Below are positions 27,239-40,178 of a stretch of DNA of 64,000 bases, in pieces. Below the pieces are notes generated by a model that saw only the letters and a program-made list of their open reading frames with translations, did no database searches and was not told the origin of the DNA. The stretch covers positions 62,001 to 126,000 of IMG/VR virus record IMGVR_UViG_3300027770_000027; one strand, given 5' to 3'. Position 1 is the stretch's first letter. Every line of letters starts with the position of its first letter. The position numbers and the translations under genes were made by a program.

Positions 27239-27562
27239 TTATTTGGTTTTTAATTCAACTACATTGTCTACTTTAGAATTCTCTTTAACTAAATTTTGTA
27301 TTTGGCGTTTTCTCCATCCTGAACCTTCTTTAGTGCTATTACTATCAAGAAATTGATAGAAACCAACACCTTGAGGACAATCTTCTGCATGAAAGATTGG
27401 TCCTGCTGCATCATCTAATTGAACCCAGAGCTTATCATAATCAATGTGATAAACTGTTCGTAGAATAGTTTGTCCAGATCCTGGATAATTCAAATCTGGC
27501 CAATTGACTTTGGAGTTTTTGCTGGTGACCTGATGGCTAATTACTAATATAACGTCTTTCAT
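27239..27562 (-). CDS. hypothetical protein
   Basis: ORF track. Confidence 0.7.
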   Translation of the reverse strand: MKDVILVISHQVTSKNSKVNWPDLNYPGSGQTILRTVYHIDYDKLWVQLDDAAGPIFHAEDCPQGVGFYQFLDSNSTKEGSGWRKRQIQNLVKENSKVDNVVELKTK

Positions 27563-31925: not shown

Positions 31926-32016
31926 TGGTACACCGGGTGGGAATTGAACCCACACCTAGGAGTTATCTACTCAGTACGTGTATAAGACGTCTTGCTCTAC
32001 CGTGAGCTACCGGTGC
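31926..32016 (-). tRNA. tRNA with TAT anticodon (Ile?) and long variable arm
   Basis: ACGT-CTTATAC-ACGT; V-arm GAGT..ACTC; canonical T-arm; ACCA end. Confidence 0.8.
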
Positions 32017-32036
32017 CTGTTGGGTTAAGTATTGTT

Positions 32037-32411
32037 ATGATTAGATTGGTTAAAGCTATCGGAGAAAAATTAAAAGGCAAGCCATTGGCAATGAGATCTC
32101 CTCATTGGGCAACTACTAGACGTCATCACTTAAAAGATCATTCTACATGTGCAGCTTGTGGTGGTACAGAAAAATTACAAGTACACCACAAACAGCCTTA
32201 TCATCTACATCCAGATTTAGAATTGGAACCTACTAATTTGATTACCTTGTGTGAATTTGGAGATATTGATTGTCATTATAATATAGGTCATCATAGAGAC
32301 TGGAAATCTTTTAATCCAAATGTAGTACAAGATGCTGCCGCCAACCTAACAATTATTAACGAAAAGAAAGTGCGCCCGGTTGGGATTGAACCAACGACCA
32401 AGGAATTATGA
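32037..32411 (+). CDS. HNH endonuclease (start revised to MIRLVK)
   Basis: CAACG..L.VHH...NLITLC....CH; TAAGTA box upstream. Confidence 0.9.
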   Translation: MIRLVKAIGEKLKGKPLAMRSPHWATTRRHHLKDHSTCAACGGTEKLQVHHKQPYHLHPDLELEPTNLITLCEFGDIDCHYNIGHHRDWKSFNPNVVQDAAANLTIINEKKVRPVGIEPTTKEL

Positions 32412-32443: not shown

Positions 32444-32484
32444 TTATGATAAAATTATAATATATCGTAAGAGGGAAATCAACC

Positions 32485-32668
32485 AGGATGATGTGTTTTT
32501 CTCGCGAGTGTCTGTCACATCGTTCAACGGCCGACCAGCTTGAGCCAATCCATTACCGTCTAAGACCAGTGTTTAAGAAACACCCCTTTCACTAGGGTGT
32601 ACAGCTAGAGGTACTAACTTCAAACTGGACTAACTCTCTCTAGGTTGTCCGGCTAAGCCGGCTCGGAT
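32485..32668 (-). ncRNA. candidate structured RNA of about 185 nt
   Basis: ORF-free and GC-rich; several hairpins with G-U pairs on the minus strand; ATAAATA upstream. Confidence 0.55.
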
Positions 32669-33226: not shown

Positions 33227-33313
33227 CCAACGGCGCTCATGTCTCTGTCTCCCAACCACGGGACACACCAGAGAAATTATACATGGGTCGATGGTATAAT
33301 GAGATTCCGTTGG
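33227..33313 (-). ncRNA. candidate three-way-junction RNA
   Basis: CCAACGG/CCGTTGG and CTCAT/ATGAG closing stem with two inner hairpins. Confidence 0.55.
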
Positions 33314-33432
33314 CCACCAGAAGAGCTCACCGGGTCTTATATGTTACTGGTTAGATAACTTTTGTCCCTTTAAGTGATTTTTTTAAGTGAATCAACACCG
33401 GATCTTGTTTTAAGTGAAAGCCAACACTAAGC

Positions 33433-33532
33433 TTTTCCAGGTTGGATTCGAACCAACGGCGAGCGCTTTGTCCCGGCATTTTGGCCCTTAACCATGAGGG
33501 AGCACTAGATCTACCAACTGAGTTACTGGAAA
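33433..33532 (-). ncRNA. tRNA-like RNA with expanded, anticodon-less arm
   Basis: Perfect acceptor stem and T-arm GTTGG-TTCGAAT-CCAAC; extra hairpin replaces the anticodon loop. Confidence 0.75.
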
Positions 33533-33536
33533 ATTA

Positions 33537-33634
33537 TGGAGACTAGGTTGGTCATTTCATCCAACATCCTGTACTGGTTCCTCAGAGTTTTATACTTAAA
33601 CTACTAGTCATTTGAAATTAAAGTGTCTAGTCTC
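33537..33634 (-). ncRNA. candidate structured RNA ending in CCA
   Basis: GAGACTAG/CTAGTCTC closing stem; motif shared with 34991-35029. Confidence 0.5.
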
Positions 33635-33641
33635 TCCCAGT

Positions 33642-33708
33642 GTCACACAACTACTTTACCAGATTAATCCGGTTACTCACTCCACATTGTGTAGAGGGCA
33701 TGTGTCGC
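33642..33708 (-). ncRNA. candidate small three-way-junction RNA
   Basis: CTCTACA/TGTGGAG and ACCGGA/TCTGGT hairpins within an ACACA/TGTGT stem. Confidence 0.45.
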
Positions 33709-33715
33709 AAAAAAA

Positions 33716-33803
33716 TGGTCGCCTAGGCCGGACTCGAACCGGCACGAGGAGTGCTCCTCGACAGATTTTAAGTCTGTTGTGTCTGCCATTTCACCACTAG
33801 GCG
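33716..33803 (-). tRNA. trnL: tRNA-Leu(TAA)
   Basis: Cloverleaf, long V-arm, CCA. Confidence 0.95.
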
Positions 33804-33806
33804 TGT

Positions 33807-33818
33807 CTATCAAAGATC
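33807..33818 (-). promoter_or_regulatory. boxA-like element GATCTTTGATAG
   Basis: Just downstream of a TTCCC promoter; identical copy at 35052-35063. Confidence 0.6.
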
Positions 33819-33871
33819 ATTTATTATGTTAATATCTTAACATCACTTACTGGGAAGGTCACCTGGGAAAT

Positions 33872-34035: not shown

Positions 34036-34109
34036 TGGTTGACCATGAAGGTAACGCTCCTTCGTCCTTCGATTATCAGTCGAGAGCTCTACTTTTAAGC
34101 TAATGGTCA
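34036..34109 (-). tRNA. trnI: tRNA-Ile(GAT) with non-canonical D- and T-loops
   Basis: T-loop AGCGTTA, D-loop AAAAGTA; CCA. Confidence 0.85.
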
Positions 34110-34270: not shown

Positions 34271-34344
34271 TGGTGGACCATGAGGGTAACGCTCCCTCTT
34301 GATTCGGTTAAAAGCCGAGTGCTTTACTTTTAAGCTAATGGTCC
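34271..34344 (-). tRNA. trnK: tRNA-Lys(TTT) with non-canonical D- and T-loops
   Basis: Same scaffold as tRNA-Ile(GAT); CCA. Confidence 0.85.
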
Positions 34345-34510: not shown

Positions 34511-34580
34511 AAGACCCGAGAGGAATTGAACCTCTAAACAGAAAGACTCATCTATCTGCCGACTTCCTTTCGGCGGGTCT
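34511..34580 (-). ncRNA. tRNA-like RNA with a 4-nt loop instead of an anticodon loop
   Basis: AGACCCG/CGGGTCT acceptor; AGAGG-TTCAATT-CCTCT T-arm; CAGATAGA-TGAG-TCTTTCTG arm. Confidence 0.75.
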
Positions 34581-34855: not shown

Positions 34856-34898
34856 TGTTTATATATTAGAGGTTTATTATGGGAAGGTCACTAAAAAA

Positions 34899-34984
34899 TG
34901 GTGGGAGATGTGGGTAACGATCCCACCGAGCATGAATGCGCCAGATTTACAGTCTGGACCGTCTCCTTAACGGTATACTCTCCC
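34899..34984 (-). tRNA. trnY: tRNA-Tyr(GTA), atypical T-loop ATCGTTA
   Basis: CCAGA-CTGTAAA-TCTGG, V-arm, CCA. Confidence 0.9.
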
Positions 34985-35127
34985 AAAAACTCCTAGGGGT
35001 TGGTCTCATTATTAAGAGGTGCCCTAGGACATGATGAAAACTGCTATGTAACTATCAAAGATCTAACTTAATTATGGTTTAAGTATACCAGCAGTCATGG
35101 GGAACTGCTCCTGGAAATTTATTTATC

Positions 35128-39074: not shown

Positions 39075-39775
39075 ATACTATGAGGATATAGCAAATGATT
39101 GACAAAGTCCAGCAGCAAATCGTGAAGAAGGGGATTTTTCCACCCTTCATGAACCTGAGACTGGGAATAGAACCACCAGCGCATAGCTTCTGGATGAGGA
39201 CCAATTACTCCAATAGAACCCTTCCATAGGTGTTGGATCAGAGCCGCTGCATCGCCGTTCTCATAGAAGGCGTGTATGGTAGCATAACACGCTTTCTCTC
39301 TGCCCTCTGAGACAACAAAAGAAGCTCCGTCATGAAAATAGGTTAAAAGAGGTCCTTCATTCCTCCAAGTCAAAGGAACAATGGCGGCTCCACTTCTCCG
39401 AGTAGATGCCCCTGGTCTTTTAATATGTTGCACTGCTTCTATATCTCCAAGGAGATCAAAGTAGTGTTTACTAGCAAAGTAAGCTCCTTGACAAATACCT
39501 AAATAACAACCACCCTCTGCAATATAATCATAAACCATTTGTTTGTAGTTTATAAGATTTTCATCAAATTGATCTGCATCTCCTAAGCCTCCCGGAAAGA
39601 CTATGCAAGCTGCTTTAGAAATATTTTCTTTATTAAATTCTAGATAAGGATAGGAACTAGGACCTATCATCATAATGTCATACAAACCTGAACCACTCAA
39701 AACCTCACAAGTGGCATCAGCACAATCAATGCTGCACATTGGATGGTCTGTATAAACCAATATCAACGGTTTCAT
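39071..39775 (-). CDS. stand-alone BPL-N / class I glutamine-amidotransferase-like protein
   Basis: FPGG, YLGICQGAY, GPHPE. Confidence 0.8.
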   Translation of the reverse strand: MKPLILVYTDHPMCSIDCADATCEVLSGSGLYDIMMIGPSSYPYLEFNKENISKAACIVFPGGLGDADQFDENLINYKQMVYDYIAEGGCYLGICQGAYFASKHYFDLLGDIEAVQHIKRPGASTRRSGAAIVPLTWRNEGPLLTYFHDGASFVVSEGREKACYATIHAFYENGDAAALIQHLWKGSIGVIGPHPEAMRWWFYSQSQVHEGWKNPLLHDLLLDFVNHLLYPHSI

Positions 39776-39806
39776 ACTACCATATTAGTATAGAAAGAAG
39801 AGAAAA

Positions 39807-40178
39807 TCACTTCTGTTTGTGATTTTTGTTTGTAGGGGTAATTCTAGACCTTGATTTTTGTTTGGGGTTTGATCTTTTTAAAGCAGCCGCTTTTTTAATT
39901 TCTTGAAATTGTTCCCATTGCCACCAGGATAACCAAAAAAACGTCAAAGACATACCCACATTCAATAAAATCTCTGTGATATTGGGAGTTGATATTGTTA
40001 ATACATTTGTAATGGCTCCACATGTAGTGACAGTTAAACCAAATTTAGCTAGATAGGCTTTAATTTTATTATCCCATATTTTATTATCCGGATCACCAAA
40101 AATATGAATAAGAAGTGCTAGAGAGGAAAATGCTATAGTACAATTGGAGATAATATTGATAATTGAGTATATAGACAT
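39807..40178 (-). CDS. three-TM membrane protein (holin-like)
   Basis: TM segments with a basic tail. Confidence 0.6.
   Translation of the reverse strand: MSIYSIINIISNCTIAFSSLALLIHIFGDPDNKIWDNKIKAYLAKFGLTVTTCGAITNVLTISTPNITEILLNVGMSLTFFWLSWWQWEQFQEIKKAAALKRSNPKQKSRSRITPTNKNHKQK

What the first reader, a model, noticed from the sequence alone, without database searches (positions are those of the whole stretch)
33227..33708. Chain of unannotated structured RNAs downstream of tRNA-Leu(TAA), with a motif repeated before tRNA-Tyr
Seen: about 480 nt without a credible ORF fold into consecutive closed units (33642-33708, 33537-33634, 33433-33532, 33227-33313). The last has complementary loops (CGACC/GGTTG), and TTTAAGTGA occurs three times at 33368-33417. 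Unit 33537-33634 and hairpin 34991-35029 share CTAG..CAC..TTAAT...AATGA..CCAAC..CTAG. Known: large phage ncRNAs such as GOLLD and ROOL lie in tRNA clusters. Inference: a new small-RNA family, or one large multi-domain RNA.
Basis: partly seen in the sequence, partly recalled or inferred. Interest (0 to 1): 0.65.

Follow-up and report, generated by a model that had tools for sequence, protein, structure and literature searches.

The report
Two conserved small RNAs in phage tRNA cluster
The non-coding stretch after tRNA-Leu in this 227-kb T4-like phage holds two separate, evolutionarily conserved small RNAs, a long tRNA look-alike with no usable anticodon loop and a two-helix motif shared with unrelated phages; the rest of the proposed chain shows no sign of being structured RNA.

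Summary
The window lies in a 227-kb T4-like phage. The region sits on the minus strand inside a tRNA cluster, downstream of a promoter-like site.

- Element B (33532-33433) is a 100-nt tRNA-shaped RNA. It has a perfect acceptor stem, a canonical T arm and D loop, and a 35-nt conserved module in place of the anticodon loop. It occurs in four distinct sequence variants. Five of its 7 acceptor pairs change by compensatory double substitutions, while the rest is nearly invariant.
It occurs in at least 9 distinct viral contigs, including high-GC P22-like ones. P1 and P2 both covary.

Neither element matches Rfam, cultured phages or bacterial genomes.

Not supported:
- The closing helix of unit 2 cuts through the conserved P2 and is absent in a relative.
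- Unit 4 and the repeat spacer have no homologues.
- The motif shared with hairpin 34991-35029 is at chance level (p≈0.09).
- The whole region folds no better than shuffles (z=-0.15).
- It is not one large RNA, because A and B occur apart in other phages.

Function is unknown. The closest analogue is the pair of small RNAs RNAC and RNAD in the T4 tRNA cluster.

The parts
33834..33862 (-). Promoter-like site, GTGACC(TTCCC)-N17-TAAGAT, upstream of tRNA-Leu(UAA). It would start the transcript that runs through the region.
   Evidence: GTGACCTTCCC, or a one-mismatch variant, occurs 7 times in the genome. In the six I checked by eye, a TAnnAT hexamer lies 17 nt after the first hexamer; five of these six sit in intergenic DNA ahead of genes, the 72297 copy being unplaced. 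Inferred, not shown.
33716..33803 (-). tRNA-Leu(UAA) with encoded CCA, followed by U7. It forms the upstream border of the region.
   Evidence: ARAGORN and Rfam; 3' end listed.
33623..33710 (-). Element A, a conserved two-helix RNA motif. P1 pairs 33705-33701 with 33649-33645. The variable hairpins are H1 (33696-33680) and H2 (33673-33658). The linker GACA lies at 33644-33641. P2 is CUGG[GAGAGA]CUAG at 33640-33627, followed by ACAC.
   Evidence: Homologues were found in L051 and in 15 IMG/VR stretches. In 9 distinct long copies, 81 of 81 pair cells are paired. P1 and P2 covary in long and short copies. Five of 6 members fold to the same architecture on their own. No Rfam match.
33533..33622 (-). 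It is not conserved; its 3' end CUAGUCUC could pair with 33634-33627.
   Evidence: In L051 it is replaced by an unrelated stretch of about 35-40 nt with a CCCC/GGGG hairpin, and the 3' partner CUAGUCUC is absent. z=-0.51.
33433..33532 (-). Element B, a 100-nt tRNA-like RNA. It has a 7-bp acceptor stem, D loop AGUUGGUA, a 5-bp anticodon-type stem that encloses a conserved 35-nt module, T arm GUUGGUUCGAAUCCAAC, and no encoded CCA.
   Evidence: Rfam tRNA 28.6 bits. Four distinct sequence variants were aligned. Covariation is given. A covariance model scores 125-127 bits only in family members. My own T-arm-plus-acceptor scan also finds it.
33369..33417 (-). Three copies of UCACUUAAA in the spacer 33314-33432. 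Specific to this phage; role unknown.
   Evidence: The spacer folds worse than shuffles (z=+1.7). No homologue was found.
33227..33313 (-). An 87-nt stem-loop structure closed by CCAACGG/CCGUUGG, 24 nt before the start of ORF 33202-32936. Specific to this phage.
   Evidence: z=-2.0 on the minus strand and -2.2 on the plus strand. It is absent upstream of the 70%-identical ORF homologue in L005 and absent in L051 and L004.

Best explanation
The stretch is a transcribed part of the phage's tRNA operon on the minus strand. It holds two independent small-RNA elements and some lineage-specific spacer.

Element B (33532-33433) is a tRNA-shaped RNA. It keeps what a tRNA needs to fold into the L shape and to be cut out of the precursor by RNase P and the 3' processing enzymes: an acceptor helix, the D loop with GG, and a canonical T arm. 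Its anticodon loop, however, is replaced by an invariant 35-nt module that lengthens the anticodon arm. It therefore most likely does not decode. I take it to be a tRNA mimic that engages some tRNA-binding factor of host or phage. That role is inferred and its partner is unknown.

Element A (33710-33623) is a compact motif: helix P1 closing variable hairpins, then GAC(A), then hairpin P2 with a GAGAGA loop. It always lies in the sense orientation just ahead of tRNAs or of the first gene of an operon. I take it to be a cis-acting leader element or a small stable RNA recognised by a protein. That too is inferred.

The remaining parts show no evidence of function: the rest of unit 2, the spacer with three UCACUUAAA copies, and unit 4.
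For: Context:
- All tRNAs lie on the minus strand, with a promoter-like site at 33862-33834.
- RNA ligases of the Rnl1 and Rnl2 types lie 4-10 kb upstream.

Element B:
- Rfam tRNA scores 28.6 bits, E=6e-4.
- Homologues of 93-98% identity occur in L051, L053/L054 and L055, where the neighbouring DNA is about 71-77% identical or cannot be aligned.
- Acceptor pairs 1-5 all change by double compensatory substitutions. One pair of the anticodon-type stem does the same, and one G·U becomes G-C.
- 99.1% of pair cells are paired. None of 500 shuffles reaches the covariation score. Slid controls give 23-46% paired.
- In the 35-nt module 33 columns are invariant. The flanks cannot be aligned, so the ends of the RNA coincide with the acceptor stem.

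Element A:
- Conserved blocks and structure-keeping changes are seen against L051.
- There are 15 further IMG/VR stretches.
- P1 variants are ACACA/UGUGU, ACACC/GGUGU, ACGCC/GGCGU and ACGAC/GUCGU.
- P2 variants are CUGG/CUAG, UCUAG/CUAGA, GGCUG/CAGCC, GUCUG/CAGAC, ACCUCG/CGAGGU and CUAG/CUAG. The short copies were not selected by the search pattern.
- G·U pairs, and co-orientation with the downstream genes, point to an RNA of this strand.

Analogy: T4 packs RNAD and RNAC 1-6 nt apart at the 3' end of its tRNA cluster, and RNAC carries a canonical T arm.
Against: - Transcription, processing and stability are all inferred.
- Folding energy gives no support for either element in this window (Element B z=-0.13; Element A z=-1.05).
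- Element B rests on four distinct sequences only, and its 35-nt module shows no covariation, so its internal fold is a guess.
- The long copies of Element A were retrieved with a pattern that fixes P2. Covariation in that set is therefore small (2 pairs) and rests mainly on the adjacent short copies.
- No binding partner or activity is known for either element.
Confidence: 0.75

Rival explanations
1. Element B is a true tRNA gene interrupted by a short intervening sequence of about 28 nt. The sequence is removed by cleavage and rejoining, for example by a nuclease together with the phage's Rnl1- or Rnl2-type ligases, to give a decoding tRNA.
For: - The body is a good tRNA.
- A 4-bp helix between the first loop bases and the end of the insert, next to a 3'-side bulge, loosely recalls a bulge-helix-bulge.
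- A related phage (G036) has a tRNA-Thr-like gene with a 29-nt hairpin inside the anticodon loop. It is the only Thr gene in a cluster of about 20 tRNAs.
- RNA ligases are encoded nearby.
Against: - No way of removing part of the 35 nt leaves a 7-nt loop with U33; every variant I tried by eye has C or G at position 33.
- The insert is more conserved than the acceptor stem, which is the opposite of what is expected for a spliced-out spacer.
- The phage encodes no archaeal-type splicing endonuclease (with positive controls).
- No protein-spliced tRNA introns are known in bacteria or phages, from my own knowledge and from a paper search that found none.
Confidence: 0.12
2. The region is decaying junk: dead tRNA genes and spacer left over in a fast-changing tRNA island, with no function.
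For: - The tRNA island varies strongly between relatives. L004 has only Met-Leu-Ile and lacks the region. Thirty-three further loci anchored on Rnl1 have 0-1 tRNA near it.
- Folding energies are ordinary.
- Unit 4, the spacer and most of unit 2 have no homologues anywhere.
Against: It cannot hold for Elements A and B. Both keep their helices through compensatory changes and keep their cores nearly invariant, while the flanking DNA diverges beyond alignment. It remains the best reading for 33622-33533 and 33432-33227.
Confidence: 0.08
3. Element A is a DNA signal and not an RNA. It would be a promoter for a single-subunit (T7/SP6-type) RNA polymerase, since GTGACACT matches the core of the SP6 promoter.
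For: It lies just upstream of genes. Two copies are sometimes found in tandem.
Against: - The bases before and after GAGAGA covary to keep a hairpin, and P1 covaries over inserts of 7-66 nt. A promoter does not need this.
- There is a single copy in the 227-kb genome.
- No T7-type polymerase was found in the genome, though that search had no positive control.
- The element occurs in a T4-like phage, which uses the host polymerase.
Confidence: 0.05

Closest known systems
Bacteriophage T4 RNAC (species 1) and RNAD (species 2), the small stable RNAs of the tRNA cluster
   Same: - They are small non-coding RNAs of about 120-140 nt, packed a few nt apart directly after the last tRNA of a T4-type tRNA cluster. 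That cluster also holds a homing endonuclease gene (HNH ORF at 31992-32411 here).
- RNAC has a canonical T arm, CCGGGUUCGAAUCCCGG, and long hairpins in place of normal arms, as Element B does.
- Their roles are unknown (PMC3014915, PMC9697503).
- They are not represented in Rfam.
   Different: - There is no sequence similarity beyond the universal T loop.
- Element B has a perfect 7-bp acceptor stem and a recognisable D loop.
- Element A has no tRNA features at all, and it also occurs in phages that are not T4-like.
Canonical tRNA (Rfam RF00005)
   Same: Element B has a 7-bp acceptor stem, U8, A14, the G18G19 D loop, a 5-bp anticodon-type stem, a 4-nt variable region and a 5-bp T stem with a UUCGAAU loop.
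   Different: - It has a 35-nt module instead of a 7-nt anticodon loop.
- Two of the four D-stem pairs are mismatched, and this is conserved.
- No CCA is encoded, although 11 of 13 canonical tRNAs of the cluster encode it.
- The acceptor sequence is free to vary.
- It scores just under the Rfam threshold.
Phage tRNAs that counter tRNA-targeting defences (T5 tRNA-Lys against PARIS; phage tRNAs with altered anticodon loops)
   Same: It is a phage-encoded tRNA-shaped molecule whose anticodon region departs from the host norm, encoded next to RNA-repair genes. The concept comes from PMC10264068, PMC11464382 and PMC11555353.
   Different: Those are working tRNAs with point changes. Element B has no usable anticodon loop. 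No defence system or target is known here; this is an analogy only.
GOLLD and ROOL large phage RNAs
   Same: They are non-coding RNAs found near tRNA genes in phage genomes.
   Different: There is no covariance-model match. The elements here are about 90-100 nt, are independent of each other, and are not parts of one RNA of more than 400 nt.
Nascent-RNA antiterminators (HK022 put, about 70 nt with two stem-loops; PMC9378689)
   Same: Element A is a leader element of about 90 nt, made of helices, lying downstream of promoters and ahead of operons in phages.
   Different: No sequence comparison was made and the architecture differs (P1 encloses hairpins, and P2 follows). No functional data exist.

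Membership tests
tRNA (RF00005) | Covariance-model score at or above the curated threshold (29 bits) | tested here: not met
   Element B scores 28.6 bits, E=6e-4. Units 1, 2 and 4 give no match at E<=10.
tRNA (RF00005) | 7-bp acceptor stem and 5-bp T stem with a T-loop of the UUCRANY type | tested here: met
   Element B has UUUCCAG/CUGGAAA and GUUGG-UUCGAAU-CCAAC. The acceptor covaries in 5 of 7 pairs.
tRNA (RF00005) | 7-nt anticodon loop with U33 and a readable anticodon | tested here: not met
   The stem 27-31/67-71 encloses 35 nt. ARAGORN calls the gene only at 75% of its thresholds, and then with an implausible 5-nt intron.
tRNA gene with an archaeal/eukaryal-type intron | Bulge-helix-bulge at the splice sites and a splicing endonuclease on hand | tested here: not met
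   The phage has no tRNA_int_endo domain, and the positive controls rang. By my reading, the bulges are 4 nt and a 1x2 internal loop, and every possible joined loop lacks U33.
T4 RNAC/RNAD | Position: small RNAs packed directly after tRNAs in a T4-type tRNA cluster | tested here: met
   T4: tRNA-Arg, RNAD and RNAC lie 1-6 nt apart. Here: tRNA-Leu, U7, Element A, a 90-nt linker, then Element B.
T4 RNAC/RNAD | Sequence homology | tested here: not met
   Only GGTTCGAATCC is shared between Element B and RNAC. The other pairs are at shuffle level, except a marginal u1 versus RNAD score (p = 0.028, uncorrected among 14 tests).
T4 RNAC/RNAD | Accumulation as stable, processed RNAs in infected cells | not testable with these tools
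GOLLD / ROOL | Match to the Rfam models; one large RNA of several hundred nt | tested here: not met
   No match at gathering or E<=10 thresholds. Elements A and B occur apart in other phages.
T7/SP6-type promoter (for Element A) | Multiple copies per genome and a phage single-subunit RNA polymerase | tested here: not met
   There is one copy in 227 kb. No RNA_pol domain was found, but that search had no positive control. Hairpin covariation is unexplained by a promoter.
HK022 put-type antiterminator RNA (for Element A) | Two stem-loops that bind the RNA polymerase zinc-binding domain; sequence similarity to putL/putR | not tested
   Only the published description was read. No sequence comparison was made.

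The most novel reading that the evidence does not exclude
Element B is a new class of phage counter-defence or RNA-repair-linked molecule. It would be a tRNA mimic without an anticodon, whose invariant 35-nt arm captures a host tRNA-cleaving or tRNA-modifying enzyme as a decoy, or which serves as a substrate for the phage's own ligases. Insert-bearing tRNA genes would then be a recurrent strategy in this group of freshwater T4-like phages. Element A would be a new, widely shared phage leader RNA bound by a conserved host factor.
Probability: 0.2. Interest if true: 0.85.

Novelty: new variant of a known kind. Interest (0 to 1): 0.66.

Why it matters
Small RNAs in phage tRNA clusters have been known since T4's RNAC and RNAD, yet their roles are still unknown after fifty years.

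This work yields two new families with clean covariation:
- A tRNA look-alike that keeps everything except the anticodon loop. Its acceptor sequence is free to drift, which argues against recognition through the acceptor stem and for recognition through the invariant arm.
- A compact two-helix motif shared by unrelated phages of very different G+C content.

Both are short enough to synthesise and test. They give concrete handles on what non-decoding RNAs in tRNA clusters do. That question now links to tRNA-targeting host defences and to phage RNA repair.

Tried and rejected
I did not try another route.
- Close relatives:
  - L002/L003 and L007-L009 are identical or differ by only two bases in 1,622 (L009), with no informative variation in the region.
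  - L004 (69% Rnl1 identity) lacks the region.
  - Thirty-three further loci anchored on Rnl1 have no similarity to it.
  - Homologues of the two downstream ORFs are rare and their upstream DNA differs.
- The first conclusion from these searches, that nothing is conserved, was overturned. A metagenome scan with a pattern from the neighbouring conserved non-coding element brought in L051.
- blastn against 50,697 phage records: only generic T-arm hits for the window's region, and none for the high-G+C copy of A.
- GTDB genome scans with the cores of B and A: nothing.
- L048 shares 20 nt with the neighbouring non-coding element, but nothing else. I took this as chance.
- Similarity of unit 2 to hairpin 34991-35029: rejected.
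- Reading UCACUUAAA as a genome-wide promoter or regulatory motif: rejected.
- A remnant of the 136-aa ORF of L005 in the region: none.
- Kinship of units 1-4 with T4 RNAC/RNAD: none beyond the T loop, apart from a marginal u1 versus RNAD score (p = 0.028).
- Phage-encoded splicing endonuclease, CCA-adding enzyme and T7-type polymerase: none found.
- A weak Rfam abiF-RNA hit (26.8 bits, threshold 37) lies upstream of Element A in L089. It is outside the motif and was not pursued.
- Paper searches found nothing on short inserts in phage tRNA genes.

Full report
**Setting.** The window is bases 62001-126000 of a 227,352-bp IMG/VR virus record rated complete. It encodes Rnl1-type and Rnl2-type RNA ligases and a gp38-like tail-fibre adhesin, so it is a T4-like jumbo phage. 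A tRNA cluster lies on the minus strand from 34984 to 31821.
- ARAGORN finds 11 tRNAs and Rfam finds 12.
- With relaxed thresholds, tRNA-Tyr(GUA) at 34899-34984 and tRNA-Ile(GAU) at 34036-34109 appear as well.

The finding covers the minus-strand DNA between tRNA-Leu(UAA) (33803-33716) and the 88-aa ORF at 33202-32936. A promoter-like site lies at 33862-33834 just before tRNA-Leu. Its first hexamer, GTGACC, is part of a GTGACCTTCCC box, and TAAGAT follows 17 nt later. The box, or a one-mismatch variant, occurs seven times in the genome; in the six copies I checked by eye a TAnnAT hexamer follows at 17 nt. The region is therefore probably transcribed together with that tRNA. This step is inferred.

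**Checking the observation.** Their statistical weight is small.
- The whole stretch folds no better than shuffles (z=-0.15).
- The four units give z=-1.56, -0.51, -0.13 and -2.01, and the spacer gives +1.7. True tRNAs of the same cluster give -2.3 to -3.5.
- The motif shared by unit 2 and the hairpin before tRNA-Tyr is matched or beaten by 9% of shuffled hairpins and by 9% of all genome windows.
- The triple UCACUUAAA is a real local cluster: 3 of the 8 copies in 227 kb lie within 49 nt. It is not a genome-wide signal.

**First round of comparisons.** All results were negative.
- Contigs carrying the downstream ORF are identical to the window, apart from two substitutions in L009.
- The nearest relative in IMG/VR (L004, 69% Rnl1 identity) has Met-Leu(UAA)-Ile(UAU) directly adjacent and lacks the region.
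- A 70%-identical homologue of the 88-aa ORF is preceded by an unrelated 136-aa ORF.
- Thirty-three more distant loci anchored on Rnl1 have 0-1 tRNA there and no similarity.
- blastn against cultured phages gives only generic T-arm hits.

One thing did stand out. The non-coding DNA after the 76-aa ORF (about 32476-32662) is conserved in L004.

**The turn.** A metagenome scan with a 20-mer from that conserved neighbour found a third lineage, L051 (identical to L052 where they overlap). On the same strand it carries, in order:
- a homologue of unit 1;
- the first 17 nt of unit 2;
- a 93%-identical homologue of unit 3;
- two tRNAs;
- the neighbouring non-coding element.

**Element B (33532-33433).** Rfam's tRNA model aligns it end to end at 28.6 bits, just under the threshold of 29. 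It places 35 nt where the 7-nt anticodon loop should be.
- Distribution. The core of the insert recurs in IMG/VR in L053/L054 (one phage) and in L055. It does not recur in 185,579 bacterial and archaeal species genomes.
- Covariation. In the four distinct sequences (alignment A5) acceptor pairs 1-5 read U-A/C-G in every combination and are always paired. One pair of the stem 27-31/67-71 changes G-C to U-A, and one G·U becomes C-G. 99.1% of pair cells are paired, no shuffle out of 500 reaches the covariation score, and slid controls give 23-46%.
- Conservation. Of the 15 variable columns, 10 are the covarying acceptor positions 1-5 and their partners, and 3 lie in the anticodon-type stem. The D arm (with its two mismatched pairs), the T arm and 33 of the 35 insert columns are invariant. 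The remaining changes are single ones in the D loop, the insert, the variable region and the discriminator. The flanks cannot be aligned, so the ends of the RNA are the ends of the acceptor helix.
- Context. In L054 and L055 the element stands alone between protein genes. No member encodes CCA, whereas 11 of 13 canonical tRNAs of this cluster do.
- Model search. A covariance model of the family scores 125-127 bits only on members. Ordinary tRNAs reach at most 49 bits (Asn) and 45 bits (Lys).

I could find no way to remove part of the insert and leave a 7-nt loop with U33. The phage has no splicing endonuclease and no CCA-adding enzyme. I therefore read B as a tRNA mimic that is cut out like a tRNA but does not decode. 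The fold of the 35-nt module is not settled, because it does not vary.

**Element A (33710-33623).** Against L051, the blocks UUGCGACAC, AUCUGG, GUGUGAC and GGAGAGACUAGACACUU are conserved, and two hairpins between them keep their pairing with different sequences. RNAalifold predicts 22 pairs, 5 of which carry double changes.

A pattern from the 3' block found 15 IMG/VR stretches. Many are high-G+C contigs unrelated to T4-like phages. In L089 the element precedes a 206-aa ORF, a large terminase and a P22-type portal.

The common architecture, from 5' to 3', is:
- P1 (5 bp; ACACC/GGUGU in most copies, ACACA/UGUGU here);
- one or two variable hairpins, or in short copies only 7-14 nt;
- GAC(A);
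- P2 (4-6 bp) with a GAGAGA loop.

The evidence for it:
- The short copies sit 60-120 nt from long ones and were not selected by the pattern. They show P1 as ACGCC/GGCGU or ACGAC/GUCGU, and P2 as GGCUG/CAGCC, GUCUG/CAGAC, CUAG/CUAG or ACCUCG/CGAGGU.
- In nine distinct long copies all 81 pair cells are paired.
- Five of six members fold to this architecture on their own.
- The element always points the same way as the genes after it. In L093 a tRNA-Asn starts 5 nt after it.
- It is single-copy in this genome. It is absent from GTDB genomes, and blastn gave no significant match to the window's region or to the high-G+C copy of A in cultured phages. It is absent from Rfam.

The 8-bp closing helix of unit 2 (GAGACUAG/CUAGUCUC) competes with P2, and its 3' strand has no counterpart in L051. 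Unit 2 as drawn is therefore not supported.

**What remains.** Three stretches have no homologue in anything I could reach: 33622-33533, the spacer with the three repeats, and unit 4 (33313-33227). Unit 4 is moderately stable on both strands (z about -2). It sits 24 nt before the ORF start, but it is missing before the ORF's 70% homologue. It may be a local terminator or a 5'-UTR structure; nothing shows this.

**Comparison with what is known.** T4 has the same layout: tRNAs, a homing endonuclease gene inside the cluster, then RNAD and RNAC packed 1-6 nt apart.
- RNAC carries a canonical T arm.
- Rfam has no model that hits either RNA.
- Their roles are unknown (PMC3014915, PMC9697503).
- Element B works like RNAC in this sense, but it shares only the universal T loop with it.

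GOLLD and ROOL are excluded by the model searches and by the independence of A and B. Recent work on phage tRNAs that escape or neutralise tRNA-cleaving defences (PMC10264068, PMC11464382, PMC11555353) offers a possible frame for B, but nothing here tests it.

**Limits.**
- There are no RNA data.
- There are only four distinct sequences for B.
- The long copies of A were retrieved with a pattern that fixes P2 (ascertainment bias).
- The functions given are inferences.

Noticed in passing
window 32476-32662 (minus strand), after the 76-aa ORF 32900-32670: A non-coding element of about 185 nt is conserved in three lineages (window, L004, L051) at 71-80% identity, at least as high as the neighbouring protein gene. 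RNAalifold predicts 34 pairs, 3 of them with compensatory double changes. The window copy has an extra 20-nt hairpin. No Rfam match. It is likely a third conserved RNA of this tRNA region.
   Followed up: partly
window 34512-34580 (minus strand): A second tRNA-like gene with a perfect acceptor stem (AGACCCG/CGGGUCU) and a canonical T arm (AGAGG-UUCAAUU-CCUCU). Its anticodon arm is a hairpin of about 9 bp capped by a UGAG tetraloop, so it has no anticodon. No CCA is encoded. Rfam and default ARAGORN miss it.
   Followed up: partly
window 34899-34984, 34036-34109 and 34271-34344 (minus strand): tRNA-Tyr(GUA), tRNA-Ile(GAU) and tRNA-Lys(UUU) have unusual T loops (AUCGUUA, AGCGUUA) instead of UUCRANY. 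Default ARAGORN misses Tyr and Ile. Rfam misses Tyr even at E<=10.
   Followed up: partly
G036:38925-39025 (in locus L085); also G022:7983-8094, G007:105849-105960, G009:31163-31274: Related phages carry other long tRNA-like genes. One is a 101-nt gene with the body of tRNA-Thr(UGU) and a 29-nt hairpin inside the anticodon loop; it is the only Thr gene in a cluster of about 20 tRNAs. The other is a 112-nt family with a T arm identical to that of Element B. Insert-bearing tRNA genes seem to recur in this phage group.
   Followed up: partly
window 33852-33862 and 34881-34891 (minus strand); genome-wide: The motif GTGACCTTCCC, or a one-mismatch variant, occurs 7 times in the genome. In the six copies I checked by eye a TAnnAT hexamer lies 17 nt after GTGACC; five of these six lie ahead of genes, which makes it a likely promoter family.
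   Followed up: partly
window 33807-33818 and 35052-35063 (minus strand): The 12-mer GATCTTTGATAG occurs exactly twice in 227 kb (about 0.03 expected). One copy lies just before tRNA-Leu(UAA) and the other just before the hairpin that precedes tRNA-Tyr.
   Followed up: no
window 34991-35029 (minus strand): A stable hairpin (z=-3.55) followed by U5 lies directly upstream of tRNA-Tyr. It looks like a terminator for the upstream gene and not like a relative of unit 2.
   Followed up: partly
window 31992-32411 (plus strand): An HNH endonuclease ORF lies on the opposite strand inside the tRNA cluster, between tRNA-Ile(UAU) and tRNA-Met. This parallels segB in the T4 tRNA cluster.
   Followed up: no
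window 31926-32016 (minus strand) and L004:13011-13100: tRNA-Ile(UAU) is 90-91 nt long, with a long extra arm that is unusual for Ile. It is 89% conserved in the relative.
   Followed up: no
genome 39411-39835 and 27420-27511 (outside the window): ARAGORN calls a tmRNA-like gene with a 33-residue tag at 39411-39835. My T-arm-plus-acceptor scan flags another tRNA-like module at 27420-27511.
   Followed up: no
L051:612-695 (minus strand), L087 and L093, upstream of Element A: A further block, AUUGGAAYGUAGCAGNC(C)UGUAAAYCCUGCUGAGA, is conserved directly upstream of Element A in three AT-rich contigs. It resembles a tRNA-Tyr anticodon arm. It is absent from the window, where tRNA-Leu precedes A.
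   Followed up: no
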